This document shows, piece by piece, positions 308-42,041 of a stretch of DNA of 64,000 bases. Under the pieces are notes generated by a model. That model did no database searches. It worked only from the letters and a program-made list of their open reading frames with translations, and had not been told where the DNA came from. Within the stretch, counting starts at the first letter, position 1; every line of letters starts with the position of its first letter. Position numbers and translations under genes: made by a program. The DNA comes from Lytechinus pictus (lineage: Eukaryota): NCBI RefSeq assembly GCF_037042905.1, contig NC_087248.1, positions 3,410,001 to 3,474,000 of the forward strand, read 5' to 3'.

Positions 308-3300
308 TAAACAAACCCTGTTTTATATCGTAGAACCTGCTCTGAAAGTAATCGTTTTTCTCTTCGCCCTTTCCCTTCATGCTTGGCTGTAGACAGAATG
401 GTGGTGGCCGTCTGTTTAGAGTTTTAAATATTTTTGGTCTAACTTTTTTTTCCAATTTCTCCTCTGTACTTTGCGAGTGGATCTAAATAATCTGAAACTG
501 ACTGAAACATTCAGGAAAGATAAAAAAACACCAAAATATCAAATTAGGGTATGTTGTATCCATATCCCTTTATGATGGCTCTCCTGATTCTCTTTCACCA
601 ATCCACTTCTATCTTTCTTCTCTCTCCTCCCTCCCCCTTTCCTTTGGGGAGGGCCAAGGAGTCAGTATACAGAGTATACATACAGTGAGCTGCGCTATAG
701 CGCCTCGCTGTAGTTCCCGTATATGTATCACGCCAAGCTATACATGAAGGGAAAGGTGCATAAAAGAGCTACAATCCACATGAATAAAGATCAAACTCGG
801 AACTCGGCCCTTGCCCATCTCTGGGATTCTCGTATCTCTTTTAGTCTTGGAGTACTTTCAGATTCATGACATAAGAGTCCGAAAGTAAGCCGTATTGGGC
901 AATCCTTTGCTTCGTCATTCACGTCAGCTAATCAACGTGTCTGAATCCTTTTTCACGCGTACGATACATTTATGGATATAGCTCAATATAGTATTCTTAT
1001 CCTGTGTGTGCTATCGCAAATAGTGGATTATATCTGAAACTAATGCAGAGCGCAAGCATGTCGCTAGCCGCCTAGCATCGGCTCATTGAGCTTGCACGCA
1101 CCGTTCGATGTTTGCTTTCTACTCAGCTACACACACAGAGTACTGCACTTTGTTGATACGGGGATTTCTTGATACTGCGCATGCGCCATGACGTATTTCA
1201 TCAATATGCATGAGTCGTAATGAATATGCATGATTCGAACGGTGTTCTAATATCAATTTATTTTTTAACCCGAGAGGGCGTCAATAAGAAAGTTCAAACT
1301 TTTATCGTTTAACCGAGATTTGTTATAATATATGTTTCACCCCTCAATATCATGAGAATATAAAAGTTATGCAAGTTTCTTTTCCGTGATAAAATAGAGC
1401 AATAATATAGGTATTTAATGAATGTAATAATTTCAAAATTGATTCATTGCCCTTGTCTGAGATCAACCAATCATACACTATACCTTTAATATACACCAGC
1501 TCACATTCAACCTGATAATGTACATACAAATAAATACATATACATTATCAGGTTTGACGTGCATAATTATGATACATATCTTATACTTATACAAACTTGT
1601 TATTTCCTTATATTGATTTATCTTCAGTTCATAGTTCGTGAACACAAAAAGGCATAATAAATTTTACCATGGTTGGTTGCACACAAGAGATTAAACTACA
1701 TTTATTAAACTCCAACGTTAAGAGTTTTATTCCCCCAGATGGAGCATATATAAAGTGACTGGATGCAAGTAAGAAATGTCTTTGTATGTTTAGCATAATA
1801 TCAAAGCTGCAATCCTATTAATAAGCATACTTTTGTCATGTTAAGTACTCAGGCAAAATGTTATAGCACTAGTATAAAGTTGCAACAATATACTTGTTTA
1901 TTGTTATCTCATGTTTATAATCCCATGTTCAATCGACTTTAAATCTACCCTTTTCTGACATTAGTATATACTACCTATAGGTATATGTGAGGTCGGTCTG
2001 ATATGTTATGATTGTTGAAAATTATGGTAATGAATGAATAAAATTGATTGATATATAAAGCTAACAGTTAGAAACCGATCCGAATTATATGGCCTTGTTA
2101 TTGTTTGTTTGTTTGCTTGCATTTATTTCTGCGTTCAAAAACACAATACAAAAATATTTACAATTACAATATTCAAAATAATTCACAATATAAACAATGT
2201 AGTCATATAACATGATAAATACAAATAAGGGTGTGAGTATAAATTAATCTTTTATAAATGTAAACATATATATATAATGTAATAAATGAACGCAGGAGAC
2301 CGCCATCGTGAGCGGTTAGGCTTGAATTGATGGCGGCCTCAATTATTGTCTAGATATCAAATCAAATTTTCAAAGAAAGAATCTTTCGATTGATGAGTGA
2401 ATGCTAGACATCATTATGTCACTTTTTTAGTATTTTTTAAGTTTGGGTAAATGATTAACTATGTACGCATTTGAATAGTACACTGATTTTTTGTTTACCA
2501 AAACTTAAACACACGACAAAATTGATGTTTTACATTAAATATTTTATATGGATTTCATTTCAATTCAATTCAAATTCTTCTTTATTCACATAAAAATGCA
2601 CATTCAAAGATAAAAAAACAATATTTTCCTGTTTAAAAAACAAGCATAAAATATCCTGTATACAACAGTATACAAAGTAATTTATTTTATACATTCATAT
2701 TTTATTATGAAGATGCTCTCCCTTAAATAACAGTAAACTCAATGATAAATTTTCCGCGAAATACCAGCAAACAATAATTGCAGAAATGAACATATTTGAA
2801 ATTTCATAATTCAAATTAGCAATTAGATCATTCTTTCCATACCACTCATGGTTACTGTTTGTGAAAGTGCAAAATTAATTTTCTTAATTTCAGTTATTCC
2901 ACATTAAAAACATCGAAAACACTAAAATACAATATTGTTCAATGTATGAGAATTATTGAACATAAAACTTAAATCAAACATGTACATAAAAAATAGGAAA
3001 AGAATCTTGGAAATATCAGAGCTTTACATTCGATCTTGACTGTCTTTCAAATCAAAATATTGTTTAGATGGACTTTAGCTTCCTCATTTGTCGTGGTTCT
3101 GACTATTGTCGGACATTATTCCTTTTATTCCGTCCATAGGTCTATGTTTTATTTGAAGAGACTGCATACTTGTACGATTTAGCTAAATTATGCCGAGCAG
3201 CCGAGGTATAACAAGCAAGGTAACAATCCTACTTCTTGTAAAAGAAATCAATTCTTGATGCCTAAAAATCGAATTATTGATCTCAGGAATTCATTCTTGT

Positions 3301-6500: not shown

Positions 6501-9500
6501 AATTTGTTTCATCCGCTGATCGGGCCAAGGGTGATTATTTGCATTATATATCGGAAACAAATCGATTTAACTATTACAGAAAGAATGGGGATACATTTCA
6601 CTTTTAAAAAAATCTAATCTGAAATCACATGAGGCAAAGCCAAGAAGCAAAAAGTTTAATCTCTCATAAGAATTTCATTTTCATCAATATTTTTGTCTTT
6701 TGAGTTGTCATATTGAATTTTCCTTGAATTTGATTGGCTGAGAATGACGGTTACTAAGTCAACTGTCGGATAAAACAGTTCCTTTCATGAAATGCTACCA
6801 TGTAAGGTTTTACTTCCAATTCGTCTAATGCCAATTCGTCCAACTGCCGACTCGTCTACTATCATTCGGTCTACCATCAGTTCGTCCACTATCCATATGG
6901 TCTAATTGCCAATTCCTCCACTCACAATTTCGTCTAATAACCAGTTGGTCCAATAGCCATTTAGTACATATACCGTTTGGTCTAATTGGGCTAAGTGTTA
7001 ATGTGCAAAATGAATGAAAATGAAATGGATATTAGACCAACTGGTTATGAGACGAAATGGTCATAGACGAAAAAAAAATAAACGAAGTGGTGATTGGAGC
7101 AAATGGTTGTTAGACGAAATGTTGATGGACGGAATGGCATTAGACTAAATGAAAGTAGACCATGTGGTGAGTGGACGAGCTGGCAGTAGACGAATTAGCA
7201 ATTTACCCCTAAGTAATTAAGCGGGCCTTGGAAGTTTGGTTTCTCTCTATCTCTCTCAACCCACATACACACCCTCCCACAAACTCCATCCGCACACATA
7301 CCCTCACGCTCCCACAGCCTTGTTTTCTCTACCTTTAACAAACACACAAACGCCCACACATGCGTCTATCAAACGATGATTCAGTATACTCAATTTCTTA
7401 TATATTAATGTAAATTTTTTCAGTCTTATTTTTCGGAGTTTTTGTGGGTTTTTATGCAGAGTTCACTTTATGGTCTGTTTGAAGAGTGGCTAGGTCAAAA
7501 TATGGTTGCCACAGATGGAAAGGTGTGGAAGAGACACCGAAAACTAATTACTAGCACTTTCCATTTCAACGCTCTCAAGAACTACATCCCCAAGATAAAC
7601 CAGGTACGTATTCGTAAAATATTTTCCAAAAGTTTATCCACGAAATATGACACTAAGGTAAAACTAAATTAATTGCACGCTTATTGGAGATAATCGAAAT
7701 ATTAGGAACAATGCACTTTCAGTAAAATAGTACACAGTTACCCACAATACAACTTCATTTGGAGAATTAACTTGTGAAGGTGAAAGCCATTTAGTTTTAA
7801 CGTACGGTGTCTATTTAAAAAAATATCAAATTAAGGCATGCGTTTTCTCCATGCATGGTATCCCATATCTTTCGCAACAAATTTATTAGAAAATGCCACA
7901 ATAAGTCATGTTCGAAGCCCCTTGCCCCGAATCCTCCCGATGATCATTCAGTCAATCTGCATTATATAAACAATCGCATTTACAAGATACATGGGCCCGT
8001 ATTCTGAAGTCGGGTTTAACTTAAACTCAGGTTTAAAGTTGTGGTCTAAGTATGGACAGCCAATTGTTACATAAATCACTAACAGAAGGGATATACTATT
8101 TCAGCTCATTTGGCTTTCAAATCATTCATAATTGTCAAGGAAGTATGTATGGATTATTGTCTTCACCATCGATGAATCAGGAAAGAGCACAGCAAACATA
8201 AGAAACGTACAACTTAATAAAAAAAATTGATACTTTTGGCTGTCCATACTTAAACCACAACTTTAAACCTGAGTTTAACTTAAACCTGACTTCAGAATAC
8301 GGGCCATGGAATATAAGAAAATATAAGCTGGGTAGATTACAATATAATAAACAAAACTGACCAATTAAACATCATGTTCTTGTCCAGGTAGCAGAGACCT
8401 TGGTTTCTGTGATCACGCAGAGATGTGAGGAAGGAAAGCCCCTAGAACTCTATAAATCAATGGGTTCATTTTCCAGTGACGTCATCCTTCAGTGTGCATT
8501 TTCCTACAAGTCTGATTGTCAAAAGGTCGAGTCACAATTCGTACAGCATGCTCACAACTTGATGGATATCGTTACGAAGAGGTACAGTACAATAGTTCTG
8601 AAAGTGGCACAGAAAACTCTAGTATGGTAACTTCACGTCAAATAGTGCGTTAATTCTATGCATTATTGTGTGAAAGTTTACCTCTGGAAGTGCATTTTTA
8701 TTCCCAATAAAATTAATTACCAACAAAAATACTGTCAATGATCCATTTTTACCAACCATTTGGTACAGCTTTACTCAACCGTGACGTACCTTTTCAGTGT
8801 ATACAATAACATAGGCCTACTCCCGGTTGCAAGACGTCTGTGACATCATTCTAAAAGCTACATTATTCGACGATATTATATGGGAGTATTGAGAACTGGT
8901 CATATGCAAATCACTCCCGTCTAAGTTTATGAGCTCGCCATTCTCGCCTGCCTTACAAAAGGTAATTGATGGTATTTTGGGGGGAAAGAGATGACACGGA
9001 TCCCTGCAATGAAATTCCCTCCTGTATGCTGAATGTGCAAAACTTCAAATTGGTATGTGGTACATGGTACATGGTGGAACGGAGCAAACCAAACGGTATA
9101 TCGCATCATCAGATCACGGAGTTGATCTGATCCTCCCAGCAGTCGCAAAGAGCATCTACATCAACATCGTTTTTCAATATCTACATCCTACATGAGGATT
9201 TCGCATCGTCCTGCGTCTTACAGGCGATTCAGAGTATCTACATCAACATCGTTTTTCAATATCTACATCCTACATGAGGATTTTGCTTCGTCCTGTCCCT
9301 TACAGGCGATTCAGACACAACCAGGTATACAGGCTATGCCTCAATGAGTAAGTCCTGGTTTAAATATGGTTATAACATGTGGGGTGATCTTTCGACCGTG
9401 AGTGGAGCCCCCGGGGTGGAGCCATCATGGGATTCGTAGAGAACTAGCAAGAAAATTTTAAATTTTTGATTGTACAGTAGATCAGTATATATCTCCTCAT

Positions 9501-11773
9501 GTACCGCTGTTCACTTCAACATAACTGCAAGTCGCAAATTATTTGAGTGTGATCGTGTTGAAGACTGTAACTAAGTAAACCTCTTTTATCAATTTATTAT
9601 ATTTACTATACAGATCCTTTAGCCCGTTCTTACCGTTTAAATTCATCTTCCGGAGATCTTCACTTTATAAACCATGGAGAAGGGGGATTGATGTTCTTCA
9701 TAAACTTATAGAGAAGCTCATTTCAGAACGAAGAGGGGAGCACAACACGAAGGGATCTAACTTGGTAAGTCGATCGCCTGAGCAGGAAATTAATATTTAT
9801 CTTGAGATCACATTGACACTAGATGGAATAGTTTCACTTGCACATGCATTTCAGTATGATTTCTAACAGATGACTGGAACAAAATCTATTTAAAATTCGA
9901 AATGAATTATTCATCGTTCTCATCTTTCATCTAGAGTTATGTTTGAAAGCAAAGGCTTACAGGCTTACACAGATTAGTAACATCCTCCCTTTTTTAATAT
10001 GATTTTAAGAGATGAATATTTTTGCTCTTTCAGGAATACTTCAAAGGGATGGACTTTCTTGACACTATCATGCTAGCCAAAGACTCTGACGGAGGACTAA
10101 CGGATGAAGAGATCAGGGACGAGGTATTACCTGACAGTAGTTACTATTAAAAACATAGAATATAGTCAATTTGTACCTCGCAATCCCCTTTTAAAGTGAT
10201 ATGGATCCATGTGAAGAATCAGAGATGATGTACAACTTGCACCTTGCAGTGTTTAGGGGTAGGAGAGAGGTCCTGGGGAGTGTTTCATGAAAGGACTTGT
10301 CAGACATTTTATCCGACAGTTACTATGGTAACAGTGCCTCTCAGCCAATCAGATTCAAGGAAAGATGTCAGACCTGACAACTCGTCGCACGAAAATGTTG
10401 ATGAAACACTCCCCGGTCTTGACAAACTTCGATCGGAACAGTTCATGTTCTAACCTTGGTTGATTTTTTTTAATTTCAACTCAAGAAAGGGTTGTACCTT
10501 TCCACCTATATTGCCAAGTACAAAATTGCCAATTGTTGTTCATAATTGCTCGTTGAACAATTCAATCTAATAAGGTAAACTTGACTGTATGAAATAAAAA
10601 CGAGCCAGAAGACTGACAGTGATTCAGCTGGTTCTTCGAATATTAGCGAAAATATTTTTTATGATAATGAACAGGAAATGAATATGGAACGCTGAAGTAT
10701 AAGCAATTTTGTTTTCCTTTGTTTTACAATTAGGCAAATACCTTCTTGGTTGCCGGAATTGATACGACATCCAGCGCCCTCACTTGGCTTATATACTTGT
10801 TGGCTACTCATCCAGAATACCAGACCATGGTTCAGGAGGAAGTTGATGAACTCTTCAAAGATCGTAAGAATCGAGAGACTTACAGGTAAATTAAGGATCT
10901 AGACGGAAATCTGAAGATGGGATTACATACTTAGATGATATTGATGAGGTCTGGTGACTGGGACATCTGAAATCCTGAGAGGAACTTACGTACCAAGGGT
11001 GTCCCCTGATAGAATGTTGAAGACCTACATTATTGGGAGGGGGGTTCCGGGGGGGGGGGCCTTCTCCTGACGAATTTTATCAGCAGGTACAACACTGCTT
11101 GGATAGGCTGTCGGATATTTAAAGGCAGGGGTATTCAGGTAGATTTATAATATATGCTCCAAGTTATTATCCTAAACAGAAAATATTGACCCCATCATGA
11201 TTCTTTTAGATTTTATGCCATTTAATCCCTATTAAACAGGATGCCAGATGTTGTGTAGTTAGAACTTGTCCCAACAGCTTGTAACCAATTAGAATTTAAA
11301 ATGTAAAATTTTGTTCATTTTACAGCGAAGACCTCCATGATACTCCGTTTCTGATAAAATGCATCAAAGAAAGTCAGCGTATGTACTCGTTTGTATCGCC
11401 TAGCCGCCTCTTAACCGAGCCGTTGGTTGTTGATGGTCTAACTATTCCGGCTGGGACCGAGATTACCATCTTCGTCTACCAACTCCATCATAACCCTGAT
11501 GTATGGGGAGATGATCACATGACATTCAAACCAAGCCGCTTCGACCGTGAGAACATAGAGAGTCGAGATTCATTCGCTTTCATTCCTTTCTCCGCTGGTG
11601 CGCGTAACTGCATCGGCCAACAGTTCGCGCTTCAGGAGATGCAAATAGCCGCGATTCGAATGTTCGACAAGTTTAGCTTTACGTTACTCCAAGATTCCAT
11701 TCCAGTCTTTAAAGTAATTAGCGCGCCACAAGATGAAATACTACTTGGTATTCATCCACGGAATGAAAAATAA
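3597..11773 (+). CDS. Cytochrome P450, CYP4 clan (paralog 1), 505 aa; join(3597..3935,7460..7603,8388..8581,9614..9764,10034..10123,10734..10885,11326..11773)
   Basis: All introns GT-AG with consistent phases (0,0,2,0,0,2), 1518 nt in total. N-terminal TM anchor, PGPKPHWLFGN proline hinge, WxxxR (WKRHR), DFLD..M.AKD..G.LTDEEIRDE, I-helix AGIDTT, ExxR (ESQR), PSRF, heme motif FSAGARNCIG. Confidence 0.93.
4095..5466. mobile_element. Degenerate non-autonomous DNA transposon (AGGGGCGGATCC termini, hAT-like) with GCGCGAAGCGC repeats
   Basis: aggggcggatcc ... ggatccgcgcccg; internal sequence shared with 30700-31414 in the opposite orientation (ttttccccgatcggccgctc). Confidence 0.6.
5692..5999. mobile_element. 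Degenerate copy of the GGCCCGTATTC MITE
   Basis: ggcccgtattcggaagtcgggttt ... cttcataatacaggcc; homologous to 7994-8305. Confidence 0.7.
6679..6800 (-). mobile_element. Degenerate X-box/CCAAT MITE copy
   Basis: Reverse-complement similarity to 41879-42041 (tgattggctgag ... aactgtcggataaaa ... tttcatgaaa). Confidence 0.55.
6806..7207. mobile_element. Fold-back MITE-like element with repeated ttcgtcta/tagacgaa subterminal motifs
   Basis: Left half has many cgtcta/cgtcca motifs; right half has their reverse complements. Confidence 0.65.
7994..8305. mobile_element. MITE with ~68-bp TIRs and 3-bp TSD (ATG); PIF/Harbinger-like
   Basis: atg|ggcccgtattctgaagtc ... gacttcagaatacgggcc|atg. Confidence 0.9.
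9040..9350 (-). mobile_element. Decayed non-LTR retrotransposon RT fragment containing an 82-bp tandem duplication (9154-9317)
   Basis: Minus-strand remnants WLCLNRL and WEDQINSVI resemble the C-terminal part of CR1/L2 RT; atctacatcaacatcg occurs at 9154 and 9236. Confidence 0.4.
10273..10416 (+). mobile_element. X-box/CCAAT MITE (GGGGAGYGTTTCAT TIRs)
   Basis: ctggggagtgtttcatgaa ... gatgaaacactccccgg; contains gttactatggtaac and ccaat. Confidence 0.8.
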
Positions 11774-15741: not shown

Positions 15742-18700
15742 ATGGATATTGGCGGCATTAGTCCAGTAGCCACAGTGCTTTTGTCCTGCTTGGTAAGCTT
15801 TTTAGGATATCGATGTCTGATCTGCGTTTTTGCAACCTGGAAAGAAGTCAAGAGAATCCTTCATATTCGACGCACTCTTCCAGGCCCCAAACCTCACTGG
15901 TTGTTCGGCAATGTCCTACAAAAACCTGGACCACTAACCCCTGGGTTAGAGTGGAATCTTAACATGGCCAAGGCCTATCCAAGACTTCATGTCTTCTGGG
16001 CTGGTTGGAAACCGGTTGTAGGGCTGAATCATCCAGACTCGATTCGGAAAATTCTCACCGACAGTGTCGGAACAGTGAAAGTGAGTCATAACCCTGTCAT
16101 TTAAAGGGATGGTCCGGGCTGAAAATATTGATATCAAAATAAACAGAGTAAAATTCACAAAGCAAAATGCAAAAAAAAAAGTCATCAAAATCGGATAACA
16201 AATAAAGAAGTTATTTAATTTAAAGTTTATAAATATTTTGTGATAACAGCCATATGCATATTGTCTTGAATATTCATTAGGTCGGCTGATGTCACATCCC
16301 CACTTTTTTTTTTCTTATGTTGTTACATGAAATCATAAATGTTTCATTTTTCATACATGTGTAAATGACGTGTCTCCGTTATGATGAAATAAGTTGCGGC
16401 AATAAATAACTAATGCACGCAATCAGTTGCCAATTGTCTTAGTTCTTGGTAGACAATTTTTGAATAAACCTAATTTCATATAATAAAATACAAAAGAACA
16501 AGTGGGGATATGACATCATCAGCCCACTTAATGAATGACGACATGCCTAGAACTGTTTCGCCGGAATAATGCAAATCTTTAAAATTCAATAACTTCATTA
16601 TTTGTCATCCGATTTTGATCAAATTTTCAGCATTTTGCTTTGTGAATTTTACTCTATTTATTTAGGTGAAGTATTTTTAGCCTGGACCATCCCTTTAGCA
16701 GTGATAATGATCCTAACTATTGCTATCGCGTGACCAGTCATTATTTAAGCGAATAAAATTTGCAAATGAATGGTACCAATTCTATCATTGTATTCTAGAT
16801 TTATATGAATAATTAGTTCTAATTCATTCACCATCAAATGGGGGATGGGCACAAAATCCTCTTAATATATTTGTCTTTATTTCCCCCATTATCTATTTCT
16901 CTTTCTACATCCCCTCAATGCCTGTATTCTCATTTATTTCCTCCTATTTTTCGTTAATTTACGCCCCGTTAAAGTGCAACCTGGGGTGCGCCCCCCTTAT
17001 ACGATCAGTGCTAATTAACATAAATTTATATAAATTCTACACAATAGGGTTTATTTAGTCAGACTACGCCTAAGCCCTCATGAATATTCATAGAATGATG
17101 TAAAACAATGCAATTCTATACAAATGTTAAAAAAAGACTTAAATCATCTATCCTGAATGATTACTAAATATTGAATTCATCAATTACAAATTAAGCCTTC
17201 AGTGCTAATTAGGAAACCTTTGATTATTTGTAAACACTGTATGATTTTCTTTAAATATATGACGCATATGATTTGTATTATGATACATATTGCATAACTG
17301 TAAATATTGTTTTTTGTACAAAAGAACAATTCAGTTGCTATAAACACGTAATCATAATATCAGGGGGGGGGGGCTACATTATACAAGCTCTGCTTTTCAG
17401 TTGGCCCTCCCTCCCTTTCAATTATTTATATTTCAATTTTATAATTGTCTATTGTAATGCTATAATGTTATCAAGTTTTCTATTTACTTCAAATATGATT
17501 ATATGTTACTATGTCGATTATATCATAATTGTAAATATGAAAATGAAATTTAAAGTGGAAAATAAAAAGCAATTGAATTGAATTGAATTGAAAAAAGACA
17601 GCAGCTCGACTGGTGTGGCGCGATAATAAAACGACGCGCTAATCTGCTAATATCGAGAGTTTACTGCAGTTTATATAGATCATTTACTCTTGCTGGAAAC
17701 TAGCCTTGAACAACTTTTCAAAGACTCCAAAACAGAGATAGACCTCATCGTAAGTGGGAGAAAATATGCACCCGGATTACTTGCCCTCCCCGCCCCTATG
17801 CCCACCACTTGTGGTATATATAGGCATTGGGATATAGACATTTTGGTGTAATTGAGATTCAATATTATTCTTATCTATATGTCAATTTCTTGCTTTTTTT
17901 ATCCATGCAGAGTTCACTTTATGGTTTGTTTGAAGAATGGCTCGGTCGAAGTATGGCTCTAACAGATGGCGACCTGTGGAAAAGACATAGGAAACTCATT
18001 ACAGGCACTTTCCACTTCAACGTTCTCAAGAATAACATTCCCAAGATAAACCAGGTATTCAAATTACGCAAAGTAAAATAATCATACTCCACGAAAAATG
18101 GCTCTCAAGTCGGTGATACGACATTAATTTTGCTCCTTCGATAATTGCTCGAGGTTTTATTTCGTCTTAGATGTAAGGTTCGGGTTGCAATAGGGTTTTA
18201 TGTTAGGTTTATGGTAGGATAGAGTGAAACCTTAACTTTAACTTAAGCATGCTGATTGAAAAGGCATATCCTGAATCAGGATATCAAGCCAACAAAAACC
18301 AAGACCAGGAAAACTGTTCCTTTGTAAATGATCAGATGCGCCTTAGTAGTCGCTGCTGTCAAAACATCTTTATGTTCTTATTGAAGATGCATATGCATTA
18401 TCAGGTGACGGCGACTATCATTGTATCAAAGGAAGGCCTGTGTTAATCTTCCATCTCTTTATAGCTCCAAATAGCAAAACTGACCAGTTCAATTCATCGT
18501 GTCCTTTTCAGGTAGCAGAGACCTTGGTTTCCGTGATCACGCAGAGATGTGAAGAAGGAAAGCCCCTAGAACTCTACAAATCAATGGGTTCATTTTCCAG
18601 TGACGTCATCCTTCAGTGTGCATTTTCCTACAAGTCTAATTGTCAAAAGGTCGAATCACAATTCGTAGAGTCATCCCACAACTTGATGGATATCGTTGCG

Positions 18701-20362
18701 AAACGGTACAGTATGATACTCCTGAAAAGGACACTGAACTTGGGTTTAACTTAGAACATGATTTAACTCGGTGCTAAAATTATGTGGGAAGCTAAAAATA
18801 TCACAAATTTATTACATGGTATACTTCTTATGTCTACTGAGATCTTTGCCAATCCTTCAATGGTACCTTCCAGGAAAATTAAGAATGACCTGAGAGTCAA
18901 ATAAGCTAACATTAAACATGTTGAACCTCTTATTTTAAAGATTGATGTCACCATTTGCTATCCATAGCAGGGGCCGCGGAACCGGGGGGGGGGGGGGGCT
19001 GGGGGGGGGGGGCTTCAGCCCCCCCCCCCCCACTTTTTTCCAAAACCGTGTACAAAAGCGCAAAATGACCATACGATTGTAGATTTTCTGCATGGTCAGC
19101 CCCCCACTTTTGGCTCAGCCCCCCCCCCCCCACTTTGAAAACCGTTCCGCGACCCCTGCATAGTTAAACCACAACTTTAAACCAGAGTTTAAATAAAACC
19201 CGATTTCAGAATAGTTAATCATCTTGGCGTAAACATCAAGAGGGGAACGTGTATGTGGTAATCTTTCGAACGCACATTGAGTAAATTCTTAACCGGCCCC
19301 TTATATATTAATTTCTATCTATTTCTTGGACACCTTTCTAGCTTCTTTAATTTTTTTTATTTTGCCACGGGTTAAGCCACAAGGGAAACGTATAGGCCTT
19401 TTTTTTAAAACATAACTGATTTTTTTATAGTATATTTCAGTACACGTGAACCCTCACAATGCCAAAAGGCGAGGCCAGGCCTAAGGCAAGGTCGAAAAGT
19501 CCGAGGCCAAGAAAGAGGAATAGGTCTGCAACGCATAACTCTATCTTTCTCGAATAAATAGTAGGCTTGTCTCAATATTTCCAGCATGTCGGAGGGGGGG
19601 GGGGGGCGACTTTCATTTCTTGGTTGGCAAGACTGACCAGTGTCAATGGGAGATTCAGTGACGTCATACTAAATGTTATCTTTATTCAGAAGGAGTTGTA
19701 GTATTATTATTTACTCAGCAAATGAAGATAATAACAATGATACGTAACAGACTCGGAGAACGACGAATTGGTGATACCCAGATACCAAATAGAAAATAAC
19801 AACTGGAGTGCTGGGGGCAGAATAGTTAACTTAATAACTGGTAATAATCCTTCTGTCTCTCTGTATGATCATATATATATATATATATATATATAAACAA
19901 AGGGAGAGGGCCCTTTGCACAACGTGTATTGCAGCGCGTCATGTTCTACGTATAGGCGTAAATAAATCAAGCATTAACGCTAGACGTAGCTTCCAAGTAT
20001 CTCTTTTATTGCGAGCTTTCGGCCAGTAGGGCCTTCATCAGGCCTATAATGCATTGAAACAAACAAAATAGAACAAAACCATACAAATAAAATCGTAATA
20101 ACAACAAAGTAAATAATGTGTAACAAAGGGTACAGAACAGAAGGATTACACTAAGAGTAATCCTTCTTAGTGTAATCCTTCTGTTCTGTACCATGTTACA
20201 CATTATTTACTTTGTTGTTATTACGATTTTATTTGTATGGTTTTGTTCTATTTTGTTTGTTTCAATGCATTATAGGCCTGATGAAGGCCCTACTGGCCGA
20301 AAGCTCGCAATAAAAGAGATACTTGGAAGTTACGTCTAGCGTTAATGCTTGATTTATTTACG

Positions 20363-20397
<35 letters not shown>

Positions 20398-20432
20398 GTA
20401 ATATAAATATATATATTACCATAGTAAAGTGG

Positions 20433-20480
<48 letters not shown>

Positions 20481-22496
20481 CCACTTTGCCTCATTAATAT
20501 ATATATATATATATAATATATATCGGTTTATTTCATTGATATGAACATGAAAACCTCTTATAAGAACTTATATATCGATTATACAGATCATTTAGCCCGG
20601 TCTTACCGTTTAAATCCATCTTCCGGAGATCTTCCCTCTACAAACCATGGAGAAATGGGATTGATGTCCTTCATGAATATATAGAAAAAATAATTTCGGA
20701 ACGAAGAGAGGAACACAAAACGAGGGGATCTAACTTAGTAAGTATTGTGAGCAGAAAAATAATGCTTGTCTTGTAAACACATTTATATTTTTAAAGTTAG
20801 ATTTCACAAGCAATCCGGTATATGTTTCTAACAGATGATTGATACTTTAAATAAAGCATATTCAATATGACTAAATAATTTTTTAACTTTTCCATCTCTC
20901 ATCTAGATTCTGATTAATTCCGAAAGCAAATGGCACACTGTCCCTTTTGTCCAAATTAATTAACCGTATGATTTTTTTTGCTGTATATTAATCCAGGAAT
21001 ACTTTAAAGGGATGGATTTCCTTGACACAGTAATGTTAGCCAAAGACTCTGCAGGAGGACTAACGGATGAAGAGATCAGAGACGAGGTAAGTAATTAGCC
21101 ATTAACTTCAGAACAAAAGACAAACAGGCAATTTGTCCCTACAAGCTCCACGCTGTTCTATGGAGTCCCGCAAGGCTCCATCATCTGACCGTTGATGTAC
21201 ACTTTGTCCACCGGTCCTTTTAGAAAGTAATATCACCTTTCATTTAGCAACCAAACGTCTCCGCACATTTAACACTTCTCAAGATTTTTTTCTTAATACA
21301 CTCGACACACAGAAACGACAAAAAATGGACATGGGCGAAAAGTGCATTTTCAACAGACTCTCTTGGACCCCTTTCGGGATTGTTTTGTAGGCTTACTTGT
21401 CATAAAATGGTTCGTTCATTTTGATAATTTTCTTGGTTGTGCACTCTGAAACCTACTTATTAAGCGGAATGTAAACGTTATCTATTAATAAAATGATGAG
21501 TGTACGTTGAATAAATTGTCAGAGGTTCTTTCATTTTCTTAAAAAAAGGCAAATACCTTCTTGGTTGCCGGAATTGATACGACATCTAGCGCACTCACTT
21601 GGTTGTTGTATTTGTTGGCAACTCATCCAGAATACCAGACCAAGGTACATGAAGAAGTTGATGAACTCTTCAAAGATCGTACAAATCGAGAGATATCCAG
21701 GTAAATTTTGGTTCTAGACGGCAATCTGAAGATGGGATTACATTACAGTTACTGTAGATTAATGGTGATATTGATTAGGTCTGGACCGTCTGTTGTCTGG
21801 GACAACTTAACCGTCTAATTTAGTCAAGATTTCCTGGCATTAAAGCCTTCCGACATTGTTAAGACAGGGGTGTTCATATAGGCCTATATACCTGACACGT
21901 TTTTCTTTTGATGGGTGCTTTTTTTATGCCGCATGATCACCTAAACCCGATGCTAGATGATGTGTTTTGAAAACTTAACCCAACATGTCGAATTAAAATC
22001 AGGTTAAAACATTACATATATATATATATAAATGTTATTCATTTGCAGTGATGATCTTCGCAATACTCCATATCTGTTGAAATGCATCAAGGAAAGTCAG
22101 CGTATTTACTCGACTGTAGCACCAGGCCGCCTCTTAACCGAGCCATTGGTTGTCGATAGGCTAACCATCCCAGCAGGAACCGAGATTACAATCTACACGC
22201 ACCAACTCCATCACAATCCTGATGTATGGGGAGATGATCACATGGCTTTCAAACCAAGCCGCTTCGACCGAGAGAACGTCGAGAGTCGAGATTCATTCGC
22301 TTTCATTCCTTTCTCCGCTGGATCGCGTAACTGCATCGGCCAACATTTCGCGCTTCAGGAGATGCAAATAGCCGCGATTCGAATGTTCGACAAGTTCAGA
22401 TTTACATTGCTCCAAGATTCCATTCCAGTCTTCAGATTAGTTAGCGCACCACAGGATGAAATATTACTTGGCATTCATCCAAGGAATGAAGAGTAA
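15742..22496 (+). CDS. Cytochrome P450, CYP4 clan (paralog 2), 505 aa; join(15742..16080,17911..18054,18512..18705,20587..20737,20997..21086,21549..21700,22049..22496)
   Basis: Same exon sizes as paralog 1 (339,144,194,151,90,152,448), GT-AG introns, intact frame, same motifs; heme motif FSAGSRNCIG. Confidence 0.93.
16105..16694. mobile_element. Kolobok-like non-autonomous DNA transposon (TTAA site, AGG...CCT termini)
   Basis: ttaa|agggatggtccgggctgaaaat ... cctggaccatccct|ttag; long imperfect TIRs; related to 52309-52912. Confidence 0.8.
17360..17590 (+). mobile_element. Probable LINE 3'-end remnant with (AATTG)n tail
   Basis: GC-rich stem-loop, AT-rich UTR, AATAAA, then aattgaattgaattgaattg. 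Confidence 0.4.
18741..19212. mobile_element. Old GGCCCGTATTC-family MITE hosting a nested insertion
   Basis: tgggtttaacttag ... ttaaaccacaactttaaaccagagtttaaataaaacccgatttcagaata matches the TIRs of 7994-8305. Confidence 0.6.
18968..19158. mobile_element. Nested GC-rich MITE with CAGGGG termini and 5-bp TSD (CATAG)
   Basis: catag|caggggccgcggaac ... gttccgcgacccctg|catag. Confidence 0.85.
20013..20041 (-). ncRNA. Minimal hammerhead ribozyme-like motif, antisense copy
   Basis: Exact reverse complement of 20278-20306. Confidence 0.5.
20278..20306 (+). ncRNA. Minimal type I hammerhead ribozyme-like motif (Penelope type)
   Basis: CUGAUGA-A-GGCC-cuacu-GGCC-GAAA-GC-UC; helix III reduced to the palindrome AGCU; helix I weak. 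Confidence 0.5.
20365..20523. repeat. Interrupted (TA)n microsatellite
   Basis: Long TA runs; another at 19871-19895. Confidence 0.9.
21110..21245 (+). mobile_element. Decayed L2/CR1 LINE reverse-transcriptase fragment
   Basis: Translates LFYGVPQGSII*PLMYTLSTGP (GVPQGS at 21162-21179), with an in-frame stop. Confidence 0.75.
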
Positions 22497-26820: not shown

Positions 26821-29800
26821 TCATCTTACATCACTGTCTTTTAGATGTAACTCGTCAAGAAGCATATCAAATCTTAATTTAGTGTACTCGTAGAACTCAT
26901 ATTCCAGTTTCATCTTTTCCTTCATCAGTGACCTGACCTCAGGGGAGGGAGGTACATACCGGTAAGCGTGAGTCTTTGCCTGGTAATCTAGAAATCAAAT
27001 GCAAGATAGACATGATATGAGTTAGAGAGAGAAATAGAACGAGAGAGAGCGTAAATGAGAATGTAGAAACAGATGAAGATAAAGTAGTCACGGGTATAAT
27101 TCTTTAATCAAAATTGGACTTTGAATAGTTATGGATGTAAAATTGTTAACGCCCGAGTCTCACCGATAAACACAGATCCTCAAGCTTTCACATGATAATC
27201 CCTTGTCTAGAATGGAAGTTCTCTTTCCCAAAGCCAATTAGGAGGGCCTCCTGATTCCTATTCCCTTACCCCGTGCCAATCCCCTTATCTCTCTTCCGCT
27301 CCCAATCAATGTATTCAGAGTGGAAATACTTCAGGTATTTTGCTTCCCTATCATACATTCTATAATAAAAGAAAAAACATTGTACCCTCTCACCGTCCTC
27401 CAAGTTACCCATGTTCAGGGTCCCGTTTTATGGAGACTTGTTATCGTAACAAATGCAGAATTTCTATAACAAATTTACTATTAGCCAATCAGATAGAAGG
27501 ATTTCAGTAGCTTTAAACTGTTATTGTAAATTTGTTATTAGAACAAGTTTTATGAAACAGGCACCAGATTCGGAAGAACCATACGGTACCCCTACCGATC
27601 CAGCTTTGTATTGATGTCTTTTCGCTCTTACCTGTCCCCTGATGTGAGTAGTATTTCTTCACCAGACCAGAAAACATTGATGGGAAAAGAAACTCCAACG
27701 CTCTCATTGATGAGTTATACTGTTCCACGATACCCACTACGGTGTAGTAGTCGAGGTTCCGTTTTGCCTCTTCCAATGTCCATTGAGTAGGTTTCCTGTA
27801 TGGTGGTGATGACGATAAGGAGATAATTGTAATGAATGATGATGCTGATGCTGATGATTGTGGTGATGATGTTGGATTGTTGGTGGTGGTGATTACGATT
27901 AAGGATGATAGATTGTGATGATTATAAAGTTGCTAATTATGGTGTTAATGATGACGATGTTGGTGGTGATAATACATGTAATTATGGTGGTGGTGTTGGT
28001 CCTAATGTTGTTGTTGATGGTGGTGGTGATGATGATGACGATGATGATGATGTGATGATGATTTTGACGATGGTAATGATTATGATGATGATCACTTCCG
28101 TAAAGGGGATTTCAGCAAAATAACCATAATTTATCACATGCCAATGCTCTGTCTTTTTCGCAATCTTGACGCAAAGGGTCAACCAGTAATTCGAATAATA
28201 AATTGAAAAAACAAAATCATATGCATCTAAAAAAAATGATGCCACAATACTGTGGGCTAATATTTCGTGAAGATTATTGCCCTACATGATGTTCTTCCAC
28301 AATGGCCAAACAACACAAATTCACAAGATTGTTAATCCTTTTTAATTGAAAAGATTACCTGCACATTGGATGGTAACCACAGAAGAATCCCATCATGTAA
28401 CCGAGCATCTTAGGCCCCGTACATGACAACCTCTCATGGTGAACGCATTCATCAAAGGTCTACAGAGGAATGAAAGGAAAGGGACAAGAACAACATCTGT
28501 CTTCACATCAAAATGCATGATTATACCAGGGAGTCTCCTCACAAATCTCTGATTTTACCGTATATTGTCACAAATGTTGATATTTTTTTAGTATAGGCCT
28601 ACTGTTAGCATTCTCAGTGTGCATGCCAATGCATTACATAGCCCTTGGTATAATTCACGAGTTTGTTTTTATCCCACCTGCGTGTCCTCCCAGCATTCCC
28701 GGCTGAGGTCAGACTCCGTGTCCTTCTATTACGTAACGGTAAGCATGGTAAGTACAGCACGTCAGTCGCGTGCGACGTGACCACTGATCTCTCCCCTATC
28801 AGTGGACGAGACCTCACGCTGAGGACAAATCGGTTTCTTGCTTATCAGCAGAATCTGCGCTTGTATTATGTAACGGCCCTCGCGTGCGACTTCGCCCAGC
28901 GATGACAGATCTTAGGCGCGTGCGACCTCGCCTGACCTCAAGCTGAGGACAGATTTGTTATTTTGATTTGGATAAATCCAGGGTCTCGCTTGTAGTCCGC
29001 CCTTGTGATATGTAACATCAAGGTCCCTGGTTGCACCTAATCCGAGAATAAAATGTTCTTGGGTATAAACTAGCTCAAAGATAGAAACTGGTAAATGAAG
29101 CATGTGAGGTTAGTTTATCAGGACAAGGCCATATTGGAAAGTGATATAAAGATGGGATTGCACTCATTAATGATGATAGTAATTGGGTCTGGTGCATGGG
29201 TCATCTTCACCGTCTAATTTAGTCGATATTTACTGGCATTCGTGAAGGGATTAAGACATTCGTCTTTACCATGGTGACGCCCCTTTTTTACACTTACCTC
29301 ATCAATGACTTCTGGATGTGTGTTTTTCCTGAGTTCTTCGAGTTGTTTAGGACTAAGCAATCCATCTCCATGTCTGTTGAAATAAAAGCTGGAGACTAAA
29401 CGATCCAACGGATCTCGCACCATGTTGAAGAAGTACACATTCTCACTGTGGAAAAAAGTGCACATCATTTTCAATTCAGTGTAAACTTTTTCTATCCCTA
29501 ATTTCAGTTTGGTTATAATATATCATTTCAGTCATTTTTCGATCATGATTTAATTCATGTTCTTAAGAGTTAATCAGTGCAGCAGAGAATTTAATTGAAA
29601 CCAAAAGTGTGTGTGTGTGTTTTTACAAACAAGTCTTTATGAACGTTTCCAGTACATTTCTTCACACTCTCATGTGGGTGTTTCTCTAGTTTAATAATTT
29701 TGATTTTGTCATCCTTTACAGATCAAGGAAATATTTAATGAAATGACTTGTCGGACGTTTTATCCGACAGTTGTCATAGTAACAGTGTCTCTCAGTCAAT

Positions 29801-32800
29801 GAAAATCAAGGAAAGATGTCAGATCTGACAACTTGTTGGACAAAAATGCTGACGAAACGTTTCCCAAGACCTGGGTGGTTAGAACTATGCAGTGAACTTT
29901 GTTGTTGATATTGACAATCTCTCAAGTAAAGCTTGACTATTAATTGGTCATCGATAAGTGAACTGGACACCGGTATTGACGCGGTTTCTCGGTTTCTATC
30001 AAACATGAAAATGAAGAACTTCACATAACCAACTCCATCTCCATCGTAGCCTCACAAAATATCCTGACAATGTTTGTAGAAAATATTTCGAGAAGCAAAC
30101 TTACTTTTGAAAATTGTTGAATCTGACATGACCTTCAAGGAACGCCCTTTTACGTGATTTGACCCCATCCACGGAGCGTGTCAAGAGAGGCAGCTCATCC
30201 TAGTGATAAGGGAAAAGGAAAGTGGTTTGAAAAAGTCAGAATAAGCCTAACAATCGACGTGAAATGACGTTACTTTTGGACTTGAGGGGGTGGGACGAAA
30301 TAGATAATGATTGTCCTGCGACCATGTATTCAAGATGAGACAGACATGATTTTTTTGCGTCTTCGTTTTGTATCAATGTGTAATGTGCTTTCGTCTAATA
30401 TTAGGTCTTGGTATAAAGACAAAATTACAATATAGATATCTCACTGCGAGAAGGATGCTTTCATATATCTCTTTATAATCCAAACACGGCACTTGAGACG
30501 GGGGCCGAAGATATCGAGATGGATGAATAAGAATGATCTATGTATTTAGCATGCAAAATAAATCGTCAATTTTCGTAATCAACATGATCAAGATAGGAAT
30601 GAGAAATTCGCATCCCGGATCCGCATCTTAAAGCACTTTTTATTTTGATAAAACGCCATCTTCAAGGATGAAGAGGGGTCTATCGGTTACAACAGATGTT
30701 GTCTAGGGGGCGAGGGGCCCGCCCTCCCCTATTGGCGGAGCAATAAAAGGGAAAAGGAAGAAAGAAAAAAGGGGGAAAAGAGGGAAAAGAGAGGAGAAGA
30801 AAGAAGAGGAGGAAGACGAATGAATATAATAAGATGACGAGAAGACTTGGAAAATAGTAAGAATCTTTCATGTCACTATATACAATTTCCGCTCGCTTCG
30901 CGCTCGCATCAATTATTTATTTATATACATATTATGTTTAAGTTACAAAAAAGTGCTTAGAATTTCCATTCTTTAGGTAAAAATGTCAAAAAATTCAGCT
31001 CGCGCTTCGTACTCGCATTATTTGATTTTTAAATATATAACGTCTTCATGGATAACTGTATGCAGTCTTTAATAGGTATATCTTTTCCATCAGTTCATTT
31101 CTGCTCGCGCTTCGCGTTCGTAGTAATTATTTAGTTGCATACACATCTTTTTCAGGATAACACACATTGCCCAGAATGTTCAAATTTTAGGAAAAATACA
31201 TAAGATTTCCCCAAAAAATTAGCTCGCGCTTCGCGCTCGCATTATATAAATAAGGATTATGATATCATTATATTTATGCTGATTTATAAGAATAAAGCTA
31301 AGAAGTGACTTCCCCTTTAAAGAAACCAAAAATCATCTTCGAGCGGCCGATTGGGGGAAAATATGGCTGAAAATTCCGCCCCCCCTCTATTAGCGAAGGC
31401 TGAATCCGCCCCTGCATGTAACGGATATGAAGGAATATCAAGATCTCGATATTTTTTCTAGTATCTGATATATCATGTATATGTGCTTGAATAGTGTCAT
31501 TAAGGTAAATAGTACTGAATTTGTCATATAAAACTTACGATTATGGTAAATACACTGGTAACCTTGATTTTGATTGGCTGCTGGATCATGTTACTTGCCT
31601 GATTGCATTTTTTTTTTTCAAGAAATAGCCCCCTTGTATTCACATTGTACATATTCTGAAGGACAAGGATGATATTTCCTTTTAGCTGGTATCGTTTCAT
31701 ATGTATAATATACAACACAGCAAAAACTGTGGTGTTAACCGGTGTACATAGAGGACCACACCAGTTATTTTACACCGGTGTTAAATTGGTGGTGTTAGTT
31801 TTACACCTATAGGTGTTATTACAACACTTATGGTTGTTACATTTACACTCTTTGGTGTTATGTTCAATCTCTAGGGTGTTATTTTAACACCTCAGGGTGT
31901 GGTCCTCTATTAACACCAATTGGTGTCAGTTTTAACACCACAGTTTTTACAGTGAAGTATAACAAATTGTTATTGCATGTAATCCATATAGCTCGTATTT
32001 TTACCAAAATGATTATTATACTATAGAAAACTATGATGGAGAAAACTACTAAGTCTTGCATTTAGAGATAAAATATTTAACCAATAATTACTTTTATTGT
32101 GTGGTATGGACTATGGAGAATTATGATGGCAACACGCATTGCTGATGATAATGACGTGAGCATTTATCTTTGTAATGTTCAACAAATTCAATAAAGATTG
32201 TTTACTTGCATTTTTGCATAAATAAATGATTCATTGCCATGAATACACTGGCGTACTGATGGGGATCTTGGGGTCATAGTCCTCAAAAGTCTGTCTCCCA
32301 GGAAAAAAACGAGAAAATAGGAGAGAAAAGGAAAGGGGAAAAGGGTGAAATGTGATATCTTTCTTTGATCTATCATAATCTTTGCTCGCTTGCAACTTCG
32401 TAGAAATTTTGCCCCATAGGCCATATATGGCCCCCTCAAAATTTCTTGCTCGTTACGTTTCTGCATGAATAGACTAAAATCGATTACGATCTCTTGGAAT
32501 CGGCGGCAAAACGGAATCACATTACCATAACTGTGACATCCCACTGATATGAAAACTACCTCTCAACCCATCACCCCATGATCCCATTACCATTTACACT
32601 AACAATCGTAATTCAATTGAAATGTAACAGGTACCAAATATTATGCTAGAAGGGACGTGTTCTGCATGGAGGCAATGCCAAGGGGACAACGTCCCGTCCG
32701 AATGTTAACATCGAAAACATTAACAAAGAAGAATTCCAAATATGAGTTGAATGCAATTTATGGACAATGTTTTAATACAAGGCAAGACATGTCACTTCCT

Positions 32801-41878: not shown

Positions 41879-42041
41879 CCGGGGAGCGTTTCATGAAAGG
41901 ACTTGTCGGACGTTTTATCCGACAAGTCCCATTTTATCCGACAGTTACCATAGTAACAGTACCTCTCAGCCAATCAAAATCAGAGAAAGATGTCAGATCT
42001 GACAACTTGTCGGATGAAAATGTTGATGAAACACTCCCCAG
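41879..42041 (+). mobile_element. X-box/CCAAT MITE (best-preserved copy)
   Basis: ccggggagcgtttcatgaa ... gatgaaacactccccag; contains gttaccatagtaac and agccaatca. Confidence 0.85.

What the first reader, a model, noticed from the sequence alone, without database searches (positions are those of the whole stretch)
19951..20368. Intronic ~205-bp-arm palindrome carrying sense and antisense hammerhead-ribozyme motifs
Seen: two near-perfect inverted arms (one substitution plus one small indel/substitution site) around an 8-nt spacer. The spacer re-copies adjacent sequence (gtaatcct), like a template-switch scar. Each arm has CUGAUGA-A-GGCC-cuacu-GGCC-GAAA-GC-UC then AATAAA, and the unit sits among (TA)n. 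Known: Penelope-like retroelements carry minimal type I hammerheads with a palindromic helix III that can work as dimers, and they produce inverted pLTRs. Inference: a young PLE relic that puts a long dsRNA hairpin (possible ADAR/Dicer substrate), a potential self-cleaving motif masked by its own antisense, and a sense-strand AATAAA (20309) into the CYP-2 pre-mRNA. Paralog 1 has none of this.
Basis: partly seen in the sequence, partly recalled or inferred. Interest (0 to 1): 0.78.

Follow-up and report, generated by a model that had tools for sequence, protein, structure and literature searches.

The report
Inverted twin Penelope retroelement tails in intron
The palindrome is real, but it is an ordinary, already-described kind of insertion: two head-to-head, 5'-truncated 3' ends of a Penelope-like retrotransposon, each with that family's usual minimal hammerhead motif, sitting in a (TA)n tract inside an intron of a cytochrome P450 gene that is still spliced normally.

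Summary
The arms are 206 nt and 204 nt around the 8-nt spacer (20157-20164). The left copy also runs 55 nt further out, to 19896, so the element spans 19896-20368.

The arm is the 3' end of a multi-copy Penelope-like element (PLE) family.
- Longer copies continue upstream into a GIY-YIG ORF.
- A ~90%-identical full-length relative has one 1,026-aa RT + GIY-YIG ORF, with the arm inside its terminal repeat (pLTR).
- Thirteen independent head-to-head pairs exist genome-wide. Their inner truncation points vary (154-1,663 nt). In every pair one arm carries the 55-nt "tail" and the other does not. All lie in (TA)n. This is the published PLE insertion signature.

The motif meets every published min-HHR criterion and recurs, with loop and helix I changes, in diverged PLE families here. 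Rfam models do not detect it, and its lowest-energy fold is not the hammerhead. A lone sense copy locked in a -372 kcal/mol hairpin should not cleave.

The intron (18706-20586) is spliced normally in one RNA data set. Any dsRNA, editing or polyadenylation effect is untested.

Verdict: a new member of a known kind, of low interest.

The parts
18706..20586 (+). Host intron 3 of P450 paralog 2 (G|GTACAG ... TATACAG|A), which contains the whole element
   Evidence: Paralog exon mapping and Pfam p450 hits on the exons. A spliced contig in run X1 has a loose 5' end that matches 18685-18704 and joins at 20586/7.
19872..19895 (.). (TA)n, left part of the target microsatellite
   Evidence: All family copies abut (TA)n.
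19896..19950 (-). 55-nt PLE 'tail': extra 3'-terminal sequence present on the left copy only. It ends in an 8-bp stem-loop (19897-19918).
   Evidence: Aligns to parent positions 1664-1718. The same tail is on exactly one arm of all 13 pairs. The stem-loop is seen.
19951..20156 (-). Left arm: 5'-truncated 3' end of the PLE (206 nt), antisense to the host gene
   Evidence: 98% to the right arm; parent 1458-1663, 98.5%.
20013..20041 (-). min-HHR core of the left copy (CUGAUGA at 20041 to C17 at 20013). It is read as antisense in the host transcript.
   Evidence: Descriptor scan.
20157..20164 (.). 8-nt junction filler GTAATCCT. With the next 3 nt it duplicates 20171-20181.
   Evidence: The junction is unique in the genome.
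20165..20368 (+). Right arm: 5'-truncated 3' end of the PLE (204 nt), 'short' end type, sense to the host gene
   Evidence: parent 1458-1663, 97.6%.
20278..20306 (+). min-HHR core of the right copy: CUGAUGA, bulged A, helix II GGCC/GGCC with loop CUACU, GAAA, palindromic AGCU, C17. The predicted cleavage site is 3' of 20306.
   Evidence: The criteria are those of PMC4209133.
20309..20314 (+). AATAAA immediately 3' of the predicted cleavage site, in host-gene sense
   Evidence: It is conserved after the HHR in diverged PLE families.
20365..20515 (.). (TA)n-rich tract, right part of the target microsatellite. It contains a second small inverted repeat at 20401-20512.
   Evidence: (I2).

Best explanation
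The feature 19896-20368 is a single insertion of a canonical Penelope-like retrotransposon, the type with a C-terminal GIY-YIG endonuclease, into a (TA)n microsatellite in intron 3 of a P450 gene. It consists of two 5'-truncated copies of the element's 3' end joined head-to-head. Shown here: the homology to RT + GIY-YIG elements, the family-wide pair architecture, and the one-sided tail. Inferred mechanism: the PLE endonuclease cut both strands of the (TA)n target, and reverse transcription was primed on both strands. One strand started at the distal start site, giving the arm with the 55-nt tail. The other started at the proximal site ~55 nt upstream, giving the short arm. This matches the two RT start sites and the extension of both strands seen in vitro for the Anolis PLE (PMC11167929). 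The two cDNAs, or one cDNA that turned around on itself, were then joined by a microhomology or template-switch step that left the 8-nt filler. Each arm carries the family's minimal type I hammerhead, which has no helix III loop and is expected to act, if at all, as a dimer or with PLE protein, followed by a conserved AAUAAA. At this locus the motif is most likely inert. Only one sense copy is in the pre-mRNA, and it is locked in a ~205-bp near-perfect hairpin. The insertion is young (about 1% difference between arms; 94-98% identity to other copies) and is most likely a neutral passenger of the intron.
For: The arm has at least 46 scored matches at 94-98% identity. Longer copies continue upstream into a GIY-YIG ORF on the same strand. 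[quoted passage not shown] The arm homolog lies inside its 356-bp terminal direct repeat, and an inverted fragment lies upstream. Thirteen independent pairs are all head-to-head, with inner ends at 154-1,663 nt, and each has one tail arm and one short arm. If the tail were assigned to arms at random, this would happen with probability 0.5^13, about 1e-4. All copies lie in (TA)n. The window's central junction is unique in the genome, so it is one event and not a mobile palindrome. A C1 copy has a 34-nt snap-back at its truncated end. The min-HHR descriptor hits only the two arms in the window. The same layout is found in PLE families whose endonuclease is ~61-76% identical. In these the loop 2 and N7 vary, and pair 2.2-1.2 changes G:C, G:U, A:U. 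The literature describes exactly this. Min-HHRs lie in pLTRs, and dual motifs occur on opposite strands 100-700 bp apart (PMC4209133). An inverted 5'-truncated copy, a one-sided tail and microsatellite targets are typical of PLE insertions (PMC8557442). Two RT start sites define the tail (PMC11167929).
Against: No Rfam hammerhead model matches, even at E<=10. The predicted lowest-energy fold of the isolated motif is a competing GGCC hairpin, not the hammerhead (-11.9 vs -7.9 kcal/mol), and the predicted dimer pairs through GGCC, not AGCU. No full-length copy of the window's own 97-98% subfamily was found. The nearest intact element is ~90% identical in nucleotides and 93% in endonuclease amino acids. 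Both window arms stop at the same parent nucleotide, unlike the other 12 pairs. The two-strand priming model does not predict this without an extra assumption, such as a common RNA 5' end or a snap-back. The tail is 55-59 nt, against the 30-40 nt reported. No read or contig spans the junctions of this locus.
Confidence: 0.9

Rival explanations
1. A single 5'-truncated PLE copy (the left, tailed one) inserted first. Its 206 nt were later duplicated in inverted orientation at the DNA level, by replication template switching or hairpin-mediated repair in the unstable (TA)n tract.
For: Both arms start at exactly the same parent nucleotide. The 8-nt filler re-copies adjacent sequence. This symmetry is unique among the 13 pairs. 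(TA)n tracts are prone to breakage and fold-back.
Against: The right arm ends precisely at the family's canonical 'short' end. The pair obeys the one-tail/one-short rule seen in the 12 other independent pairs, which have asymmetric arms and so cannot be DNA fold-backs. A snap-back made during reverse transcription explains the symmetry equally well (C1 copy).
Confidence: 0.06
2. The palindrome is an assembly artefact: a mis-joined or chimeric long read at a single PLE fragment.
For: No independent read or contig spans the centre or the flank junctions. The literature notes that PLE structures trouble assemblies (PMC8557442).
Against: The same architecture occurs at 12 other independent loci with different junctions. 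The arms differ at two sites, which a chimeric copy of one read would not produce. The arms have different outer ends (tail vs short). The assembly is highly contiguous, with contigs up to 70 Mb.
Confidence: 0.03
3. It is a foldback or MITE-type DNA transposon with ~205-bp terminal inverted repeats and a TA target duplication.
For: It is a near-perfect palindrome flanked by TA repeats. Many inverted pairs exist in the genome.
Against: The inner ends of the arms differ from pair to pair, and the arms extend into RT + GIY-YIG coding sequence. The outer ends are asymmetric. The window's junction occurs only once in the genome. No transposase was found.
Confidence: 0.01
4. Whatever its origin, the intronic hairpin has been co-opted. 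It acts as a dsRNA source (endo-siRNA or ADAR substrate) or as a premature poly(A) site that modulates P450 paralog 2 or silences the PLE family.
For: If transcribed, the ~205-bp duplex is certain to form. AATAAA lies in the sense orientation. The family is transcribed elsewhere in the genome (3 RNA reads running into longer copies).
Against: There is no small-RNA, editing or 3'-end evidence. The intron is spliced out and exons 4-5 are present in run X1. The insertion is young and unique, so there is no conservation to argue for function.
Confidence: 0.05

Closest known systems
Canonical EN+ Penelope-like elements (Neptune/Nematis/Penelope-Poseidon type) and their complex insertions (Arkhipova 2006; Craig et al. 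2021, PMC8557442)
   Same: A single ORF with RT and C-terminal GIY-YIG, including the CCHH cysteines. Terminal direct repeats (pLTR) that hold the HHR. Heavy 5' truncation. An inverted 5'-truncated copy placed head-to-head. A 'tail' at one end only. Insertion into (TA)n / AT-rich DNA.
   Different: Here both members of the pair are short fragments (206 + 204 nt) truncated at the same nucleotide, which gives a nearly perfect palindrome. The tail is 55-59 nt, not 30-40 nt. The clade was not resolved by phylogeny. The linker reads CX4CxxH, not CX2-5CxxC.
Minimal hammerhead ribozymes of metazoan PLEs (Cervera and de la Pena 2014, PMC4209133)
   Same: CUGANGA and GAAA boxes. [quoted passage not shown] A G10.1-C11.1 pair. 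No helix III loop, with a palindromic 15.1-16.1 stretch (AGCU). Location in the pLTR. Occurrence as pairs on opposite strands a few hundred bp apart.
   Different: Helix II is only 4 bp (GGCC), where 6-8 bp is common in the published families. Helix I is weak (2 bp, an internal loop, then 4 bp). Activity was not tested. A third GGCC allows a competing hairpin.
Anolis Poseidon PLE (PAc) in vitro system (Frangieh et al. 2024, PMC11167929)
   Same: Two RT start sites whose spacing equals the genomic 'tail'. Cleavage and extension of both target strands. AT-rich targets. An HHR that is not needed for insertion and needs protein to cleave.
   Different: That work is biochemical and on a vertebrate element. 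Here the evidence is only the genomic footprint. In this family the short end coincides with a UAUA that matches the (TA)n target, so microhomology cannot be excluded.
Metazoan non-LTR retrozymes (Cervera and de la Pena 2020, PMC7229834; bioRxiv 10.64898/2026.07.22.740005)
   Same: Non-autonomous, HHR-bearing sequences related to PLE pLTRs.
   Different: Retrozymes are head-to-tail tandem units that give circular RNAs. This locus is an inverted pair with one sense motif, so it cannot make a unit-length RNA by double cleavage.
L1 twin-priming inversions
   Same: A second priming event on the other target strand during target-primed reverse transcription gives inverted segments.
   Different: L1 twin priming inverts different parts of one RNA. 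Here both arms copy the same 3' end.

Membership tests
Penelope-like element (EN+ PLE) insertion | Sequence continuity with an element that encodes RT and GIY-YIG endonuclease in one ORF | tested here: met
   A GIY-YIG ORF lies directly upstream of the arm in longer copies. The C20 relative has a 1,026-aa ORF with RVT_1 (E 2.8e-8) and GIY-YIG (E 1.8e-4; 22.2 bits, just under Pfam's 22.6 cutoff; the closer copy scores 29.3). CCHH-type cysteines and histidines are present.
Penelope-like element (EN+ PLE) insertion | The arm lies in the pseudo-LTR (terminal direct repeat made by partial tandem) | tested here: met
   In L072rc, 886-1241 equals 6951-7306 (100%), and the arm homolog sits at 998-1182 and 7063-7247.
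Penelope-like element (EN+ PLE) insertion | Variable 5' truncation and head-to-head inverted copies | tested here: met
   Thirteen independent pairs, all -/+, with inner ends at 154-1,663 nt from the 3' end.
Penelope-like element (EN+ PLE) insertion | [quoted passage not shown] | tested here: met
   One tailed arm and one short arm in 13 of 13 pairs, the window included.
Penelope-like element (EN+ PLE) insertion | Clade placement by RT/EN phylogeny | not tested
   Only motif inspection was done (CCHH present, CX4CxxH linker). No reference PLE proteins were on hand.
Hammerhead ribozyme, minimal type I (PLE min-HHR) | Catalytic core C3-U4-G5-A6-N7-G8-A9, G12-A13-A14, A15.1-U16.1, H17 | tested here: met
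   CUGAUGA ... GAAA-GC-UC is present in both arms.
Hammerhead ribozyme, minimal type I (PLE min-HHR) | [quoted passage not shown] | tested here: met
   A bulged A, then GGCC-CUACU-GGCC. The same is found in four diverged families.
Hammerhead ribozyme, minimal type I (PLE min-HHR) | No helix III loop, with palindromic 15.2-16.2 so that two copies can form helix III | tested here: met
   A-G-C-U at positions 15.1-16.1.
Hammerhead ribozyme, minimal type I (PLE min-HHR) | Helix I pairing, supported by covariation | tested here: inconclusive
   Only 2 bp, an internal loop, then 4 bp in the window. Pair 2.2-1.2 changes G:C / G:U / A:U across families, but there are few independent sequences.
Hammerhead ribozyme, minimal type I (PLE min-HHR) | Match to the Rfam hammerhead covariance models | tested here: not met
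   No hit at gathering score in the window, and none at E<=10 in 19850-20450. This is expected for a motif without helix III, but it remains a failed test.
Hammerhead ribozyme, minimal type I (PLE min-HHR) | Self-cleavage | not testable with these tools
   Thermodynamic folding favours a competing GGCC hairpin in the monomer and the dimer. Published min-HHRs cleave poorly, and only as dimers or with protein (PMC4209133, PMC11167929).
Foldback / MITE DNA transposon | A fixed palindromic unit present in many copies with defined termini and target-site duplications | tested here: not met
   The central junction is unique in the genome. Arm lengths vary between loci. The outer ends are asymmetric.
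Non-LTR retrozyme | Head-to-tail tandem HHR units on one strand | tested here: not met
   The two motifs are on opposite strands. No tandem copy is at the locus.

The most novel reading that the evidence does not exclude
The strict rule seen here may be an in vivo footprint of a dimeric PLE ribonucleoprotein. In 13 of 13 head-to-head pairs, one arm starts at the distal site (with the 55-nt tail) and the other at the proximal site. Such a particle would prime reverse transcription on both target strands at once, each protomer using a different one of the two start sites. The window's perfectly symmetric pair would then record both cDNAs running to a common RNA 5' end. Separately, the resulting intronic ~205-bp dsRNA could feed siRNA silencing of the still-transcribed family.
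Probability: 0.15. Interest if true: 0.5.

Novelty: new member of a known kind. Interest (0 to 1): 0.2.

Why it matters
For this gene it matters little. The insertion is a young intronic passenger and the intron is still spliced. It does serve as a clean, well-bounded example of the inverted-twin form of PLE insertion. The family around it has 13 pairs with different junctions, each with exactly one tailed end. That gives genomic support for the two-start-site, both-strand priming model so far shown only in vitro for one vertebrate PLE. It also shows that near-perfect long palindromes carrying ribozyme motifs can be routine by-products of PLE integration and need not be new RNA devices.

Tried and rejected
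- Rfam scans at gathering score and at E<=10 gave no hammerhead family, only microRNA-like noise from the hairpin and (TA)n.
- The DNA-transposon/TIR reading was considered after one search showed many inverted pairs. It was rejected once the arms proved to have variable, asymmetric inner ends and to continue into GIY-YIG coding sequence.
- The 692-aa RVT_1 + zf-RVT ORF inside L031 was first a candidate for the element's RT. It is a LINE-like insert lying between inverted PLE copies, not part of the family.
- An empty-site comparison with paralog 1 failed: the two introns do not align at all.
- The reads include no run on record as RNA that holds the stretch. The contigs break at the repeats. 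Nothing spans the centre or the flanks, so assembly and locus-specific expression stay untested. The 3 RNA reads on the arm run on into longer family copies.
- ViennaRNA monomer and dimer folding did not recover the hammerhead fold.
- A words look-up of earlier scan notes returned nothing. The one note near this place concerns another feature and did not bear on this report.
- The large protein searches, structure prediction and complex prediction were not used, because the family scans settled the identity of the element.
- The host organism was not identified, because run and organism names are coded.

Full report
**Observation**

The palindrome is real. One search reports two sets of inverted arms around an 8-nt spacer at 20157-20164:
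- 19951-20125 and 20194-20368 (175 nt, 99% complementary)
- 20129-20156 and 20165-20192 (28 nt, 100% complementary)

The arms differ by one substitution and one small indel/substitution site. As RNA, the region folds into one long hairpin of -372 kcal/mol, z = -44 against shuffles. The spacer plus the next three bases repeats 20171-20181.

Each arm holds CUGAUGA-A-GGCC-CUACU-GGCC-GAAA-GC-UC followed by AATAAA. I wrote a descriptor for the published minimal hammerhead. It hits the window's 128 kb of both strands only at these two places, with 0.04 hits expected in shuffles. (TA)n lies on both sides.

**What the arm is**

The right arm has at least 46 scored matches in the window's own genome, at 94-98% identity. 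Many sit as -/+ inverted pairs, with 23 bp to 5.5 kb between the matched arms. That first suggested a DNA transposon with terminal inverted repeats, but dissection of the longer pairs showed otherwise:
- The arms extend inward for different, asymmetric lengths in different loci. Examples are 392+263, 176+263, 173+224, 423+1,616 and 518+1,235 nt. This is the pattern of variable 5' truncation of a retroelement.
- In the longest copies the arm continues upstream into an ORF with a GIY-YIG domain on the same strand.
- A protein search of the genome with that ORF found a copy on contig C20, 93% identical, inside a 1,026-aa open frame.

That C20 copy is a complete Penelope-like element (PLE):
- It has RVT_1 plus a C-terminal GIY-YIG in one ORF.
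- Two cysteines lie inside the GIY-YIG core, histidines follow downstream, and a CX4CxxH linker lies upstream.
- A 356-bp direct repeat sits at both ends (the pLTR) and contains the arm homolog with its hammerhead motif.
- An inverted fragment lies just upstream.

No full-length copy of the window's own 97-98% subfamily was seen among the scored matches. Its source copy is either lost, or it was mobilised by relatives of the C20 type.

**Family-wide architecture**

Aligning the 3' ends of about 40 copies revealed two kinds of outer end:
- A 'short' end, where ...TTTACGCCTA runs straight into (TA)n.
- A 'long' end, with 55 more nucleotides before (TA)n.

In all 13 independent pairs, exactly one arm is long and one is short. 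Segmental duplicates on C11 and on C6/C34 were counted once. Every pair is head-to-head.

The window obeys the rule. Its left copy carries the tail, so the element runs from 19896, not 19951, to 20368.

This matches the published description of PLE insertions. PMC8557442 (text and Fig. [quoted passage not shown] PMC4209133 already noted dual min-HHRs 100-700 bp apart on opposite strands. PMC11167929 showed in vitro that an Anolis PLE cleaves and extends both target strands and starts reverse transcription at two internal sites, whose spacing corresponds to the tail.

My reading is inferred from these footprints. Both strands of the (TA)n target were primed, one from each start site, and the two products were then joined.

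**The window's peculiarity**

Both arms stop at the same parent nucleotide, unlike the other 12 pairs. The central junction occurs nowhere else in the genome, so this is one event and not a mobile palindromic unit.

A copy on C1 carries a 34-nt snap-back at its truncated end, which shows that turn-around synthesis happens in this family. Three explanations for the symmetry remain open:
- a snap-back during reverse transcription
- two cDNAs that ran to a common RNA end
- a later DNA-level fold-back in the unstable (TA)n tract

I consider the third the least likely, because the right arm ends exactly at the family's canonical short end.

**The hammerhead motif**

The motif meets every criterion listed for metazoan PLE min-HHRs in PMC4209133:
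- the core boxes
- an unpaired base between positions 9 and 10.1
- a G10.1-C11.1 pair
- no helix III loop, with the palindrome AGCU at positions 15.1-16.1

The same layout sits at the same 3' position in PLE families of this genome whose endonuclease is only ~61-76% identical. In those families loop 2 and N7 vary, and pair 2.2-1.2 changes G:C, G:U, A:U. An AAUAAA follows the cleavage site in each of them.

Three things count against calling it an active ribozyme:
- Rfam's models do not match, even at E<=10.
- Helix I is weak.
- ViennaRNA prefers a competing hairpin between two of the three GGCC blocks, in both the monomer and the dimer.

Published min-HHRs show no cleavage as monomers and only weak cleavage as dimers (PMC4209133). 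The Anolis motif cleaves only with the PLE protein and is not needed for insertion (PMC11167929). In the host pre-mRNA there is just one sense copy, and it is buried in the ~205-bp duplex. I therefore expect no cleavage at this locus.

**Host context**

Two tandem P450 genes lie on the + strand. A spliced contig in run X1 joins 20737 to 20997 (GT..AG). Its loose 5' end matches 18685-18704. The element therefore lies in intron 18706-20586 of paralog 2, about 220 nt upstream of the 3' splice site.

In that data set the intron is removed and the downstream exons are present. The sense AATAAA at 20309 therefore does not stop all transcripts. The individual behind X1 could lack the insertion, which I could not check.

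Paralog 1 has no copy and no (TA)n run in the matching intron. The two introns do not align, so no empty site could be shown.

No read or contig spans the palindrome's centre or its flanks. Independent confirmation of the assembly is therefore missing, as is any locus-specific expression, editing or small-RNA signal. Three RNA reads on the arm run on into longer family copies, so the family is transcribed somewhere in the genome.

**Verdict**

The PLE origin is confirmed. The functional claims are unsupported. The structure is a known product of PLE integration, so this is a new member of a known kind and its interest is low. The one point worth keeping is the strict one-tail-per-pair rule, with a 55-59-nt tail. 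It is a tidy genomic correlate of the two-start-site mechanism.

Noticed in passing
Genome-wide pairs: L009/L010, L014-L018, L021, L024-L027, L029, L031, L035-L041; window 19896-20368: In 13 of 13 independent head-to-head PLE pairs, exactly one arm carries the 55-59-nt tail and the other ends at the proximal site. The tail's outer end varies by about 4 nt (...CCTTT or ...CCTTTGTTT). It is longer than the 30-40 nt quoted in the literature.
   Followed up: partly
L073:470-560 (G000:C1:43594070-43594160): A single 5'-truncated copy ends in a 34-nt snap-back hairpin (...CACTAAGATAACAAAAAAATTGTTATCTTAGTG...) and then joins unrelated DNA. This is direct evidence of turn-around synthesis at truncated 5' ends in this family.
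   Followed up: partly
L031:2222-4300 (+): A 692-aa ORF with RVT_1 and zf-RVT (LINE-like) lies between inverted PLE copies. It is probably a nested insertion of an unrelated non-LTR element.
   Followed up: no
L072 minus strand, about 2043-3006 of the reverse complement (5' UTR of the full-length PLE): An array of ~114-bp tandem repeats lies between the upstream pLTR and the start of the 1,026-aa ORF.
   Followed up: no
L047-L063 and window 20307-20314: AAUAAA follows the predicted hammerhead cleavage site within 2-6 nt in all four diverged PLE families examined, inside the 3' strand of helix I. The element nevertheless continues ~55-110 nt beyond it.
   Followed up: no
window 20401-20512: A second inverted repeat (56-nt arms, 88% complementary; GTGGTAATATA...TATATTACCAC) is embedded in the (TA)n tract just right of the element.
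   Followed up: no
window 20269-20300: Three GGCC blocks (one in helix I, two in helix II) allow a competing 5-bp hairpin that sequesters CUGAUGA. It is more stable than the hammerhead fold in ViennaRNA (-11.9 vs -7.9 kcal/mol).
   Followed up: partly
window 19001-19158, 10278-10416, 29758-29865, 41884-42039: Other short interspersed repeats, 80-92% identical to the flanks of the C20 locus (L072), are scattered through the window. One lies in the same intron. They are unrelated to the PLE.
   Followed up: no
G000:C11 at ~142 kb, ~369 kb and ~894 kb; C6:28.336 Mb and C34:0.387 Mb: Identical PLE pair structures with identical flanks recur at these places. They indicate segmental duplications, or an uncollapsed haplotig in the case of C34.
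   Followed up: no
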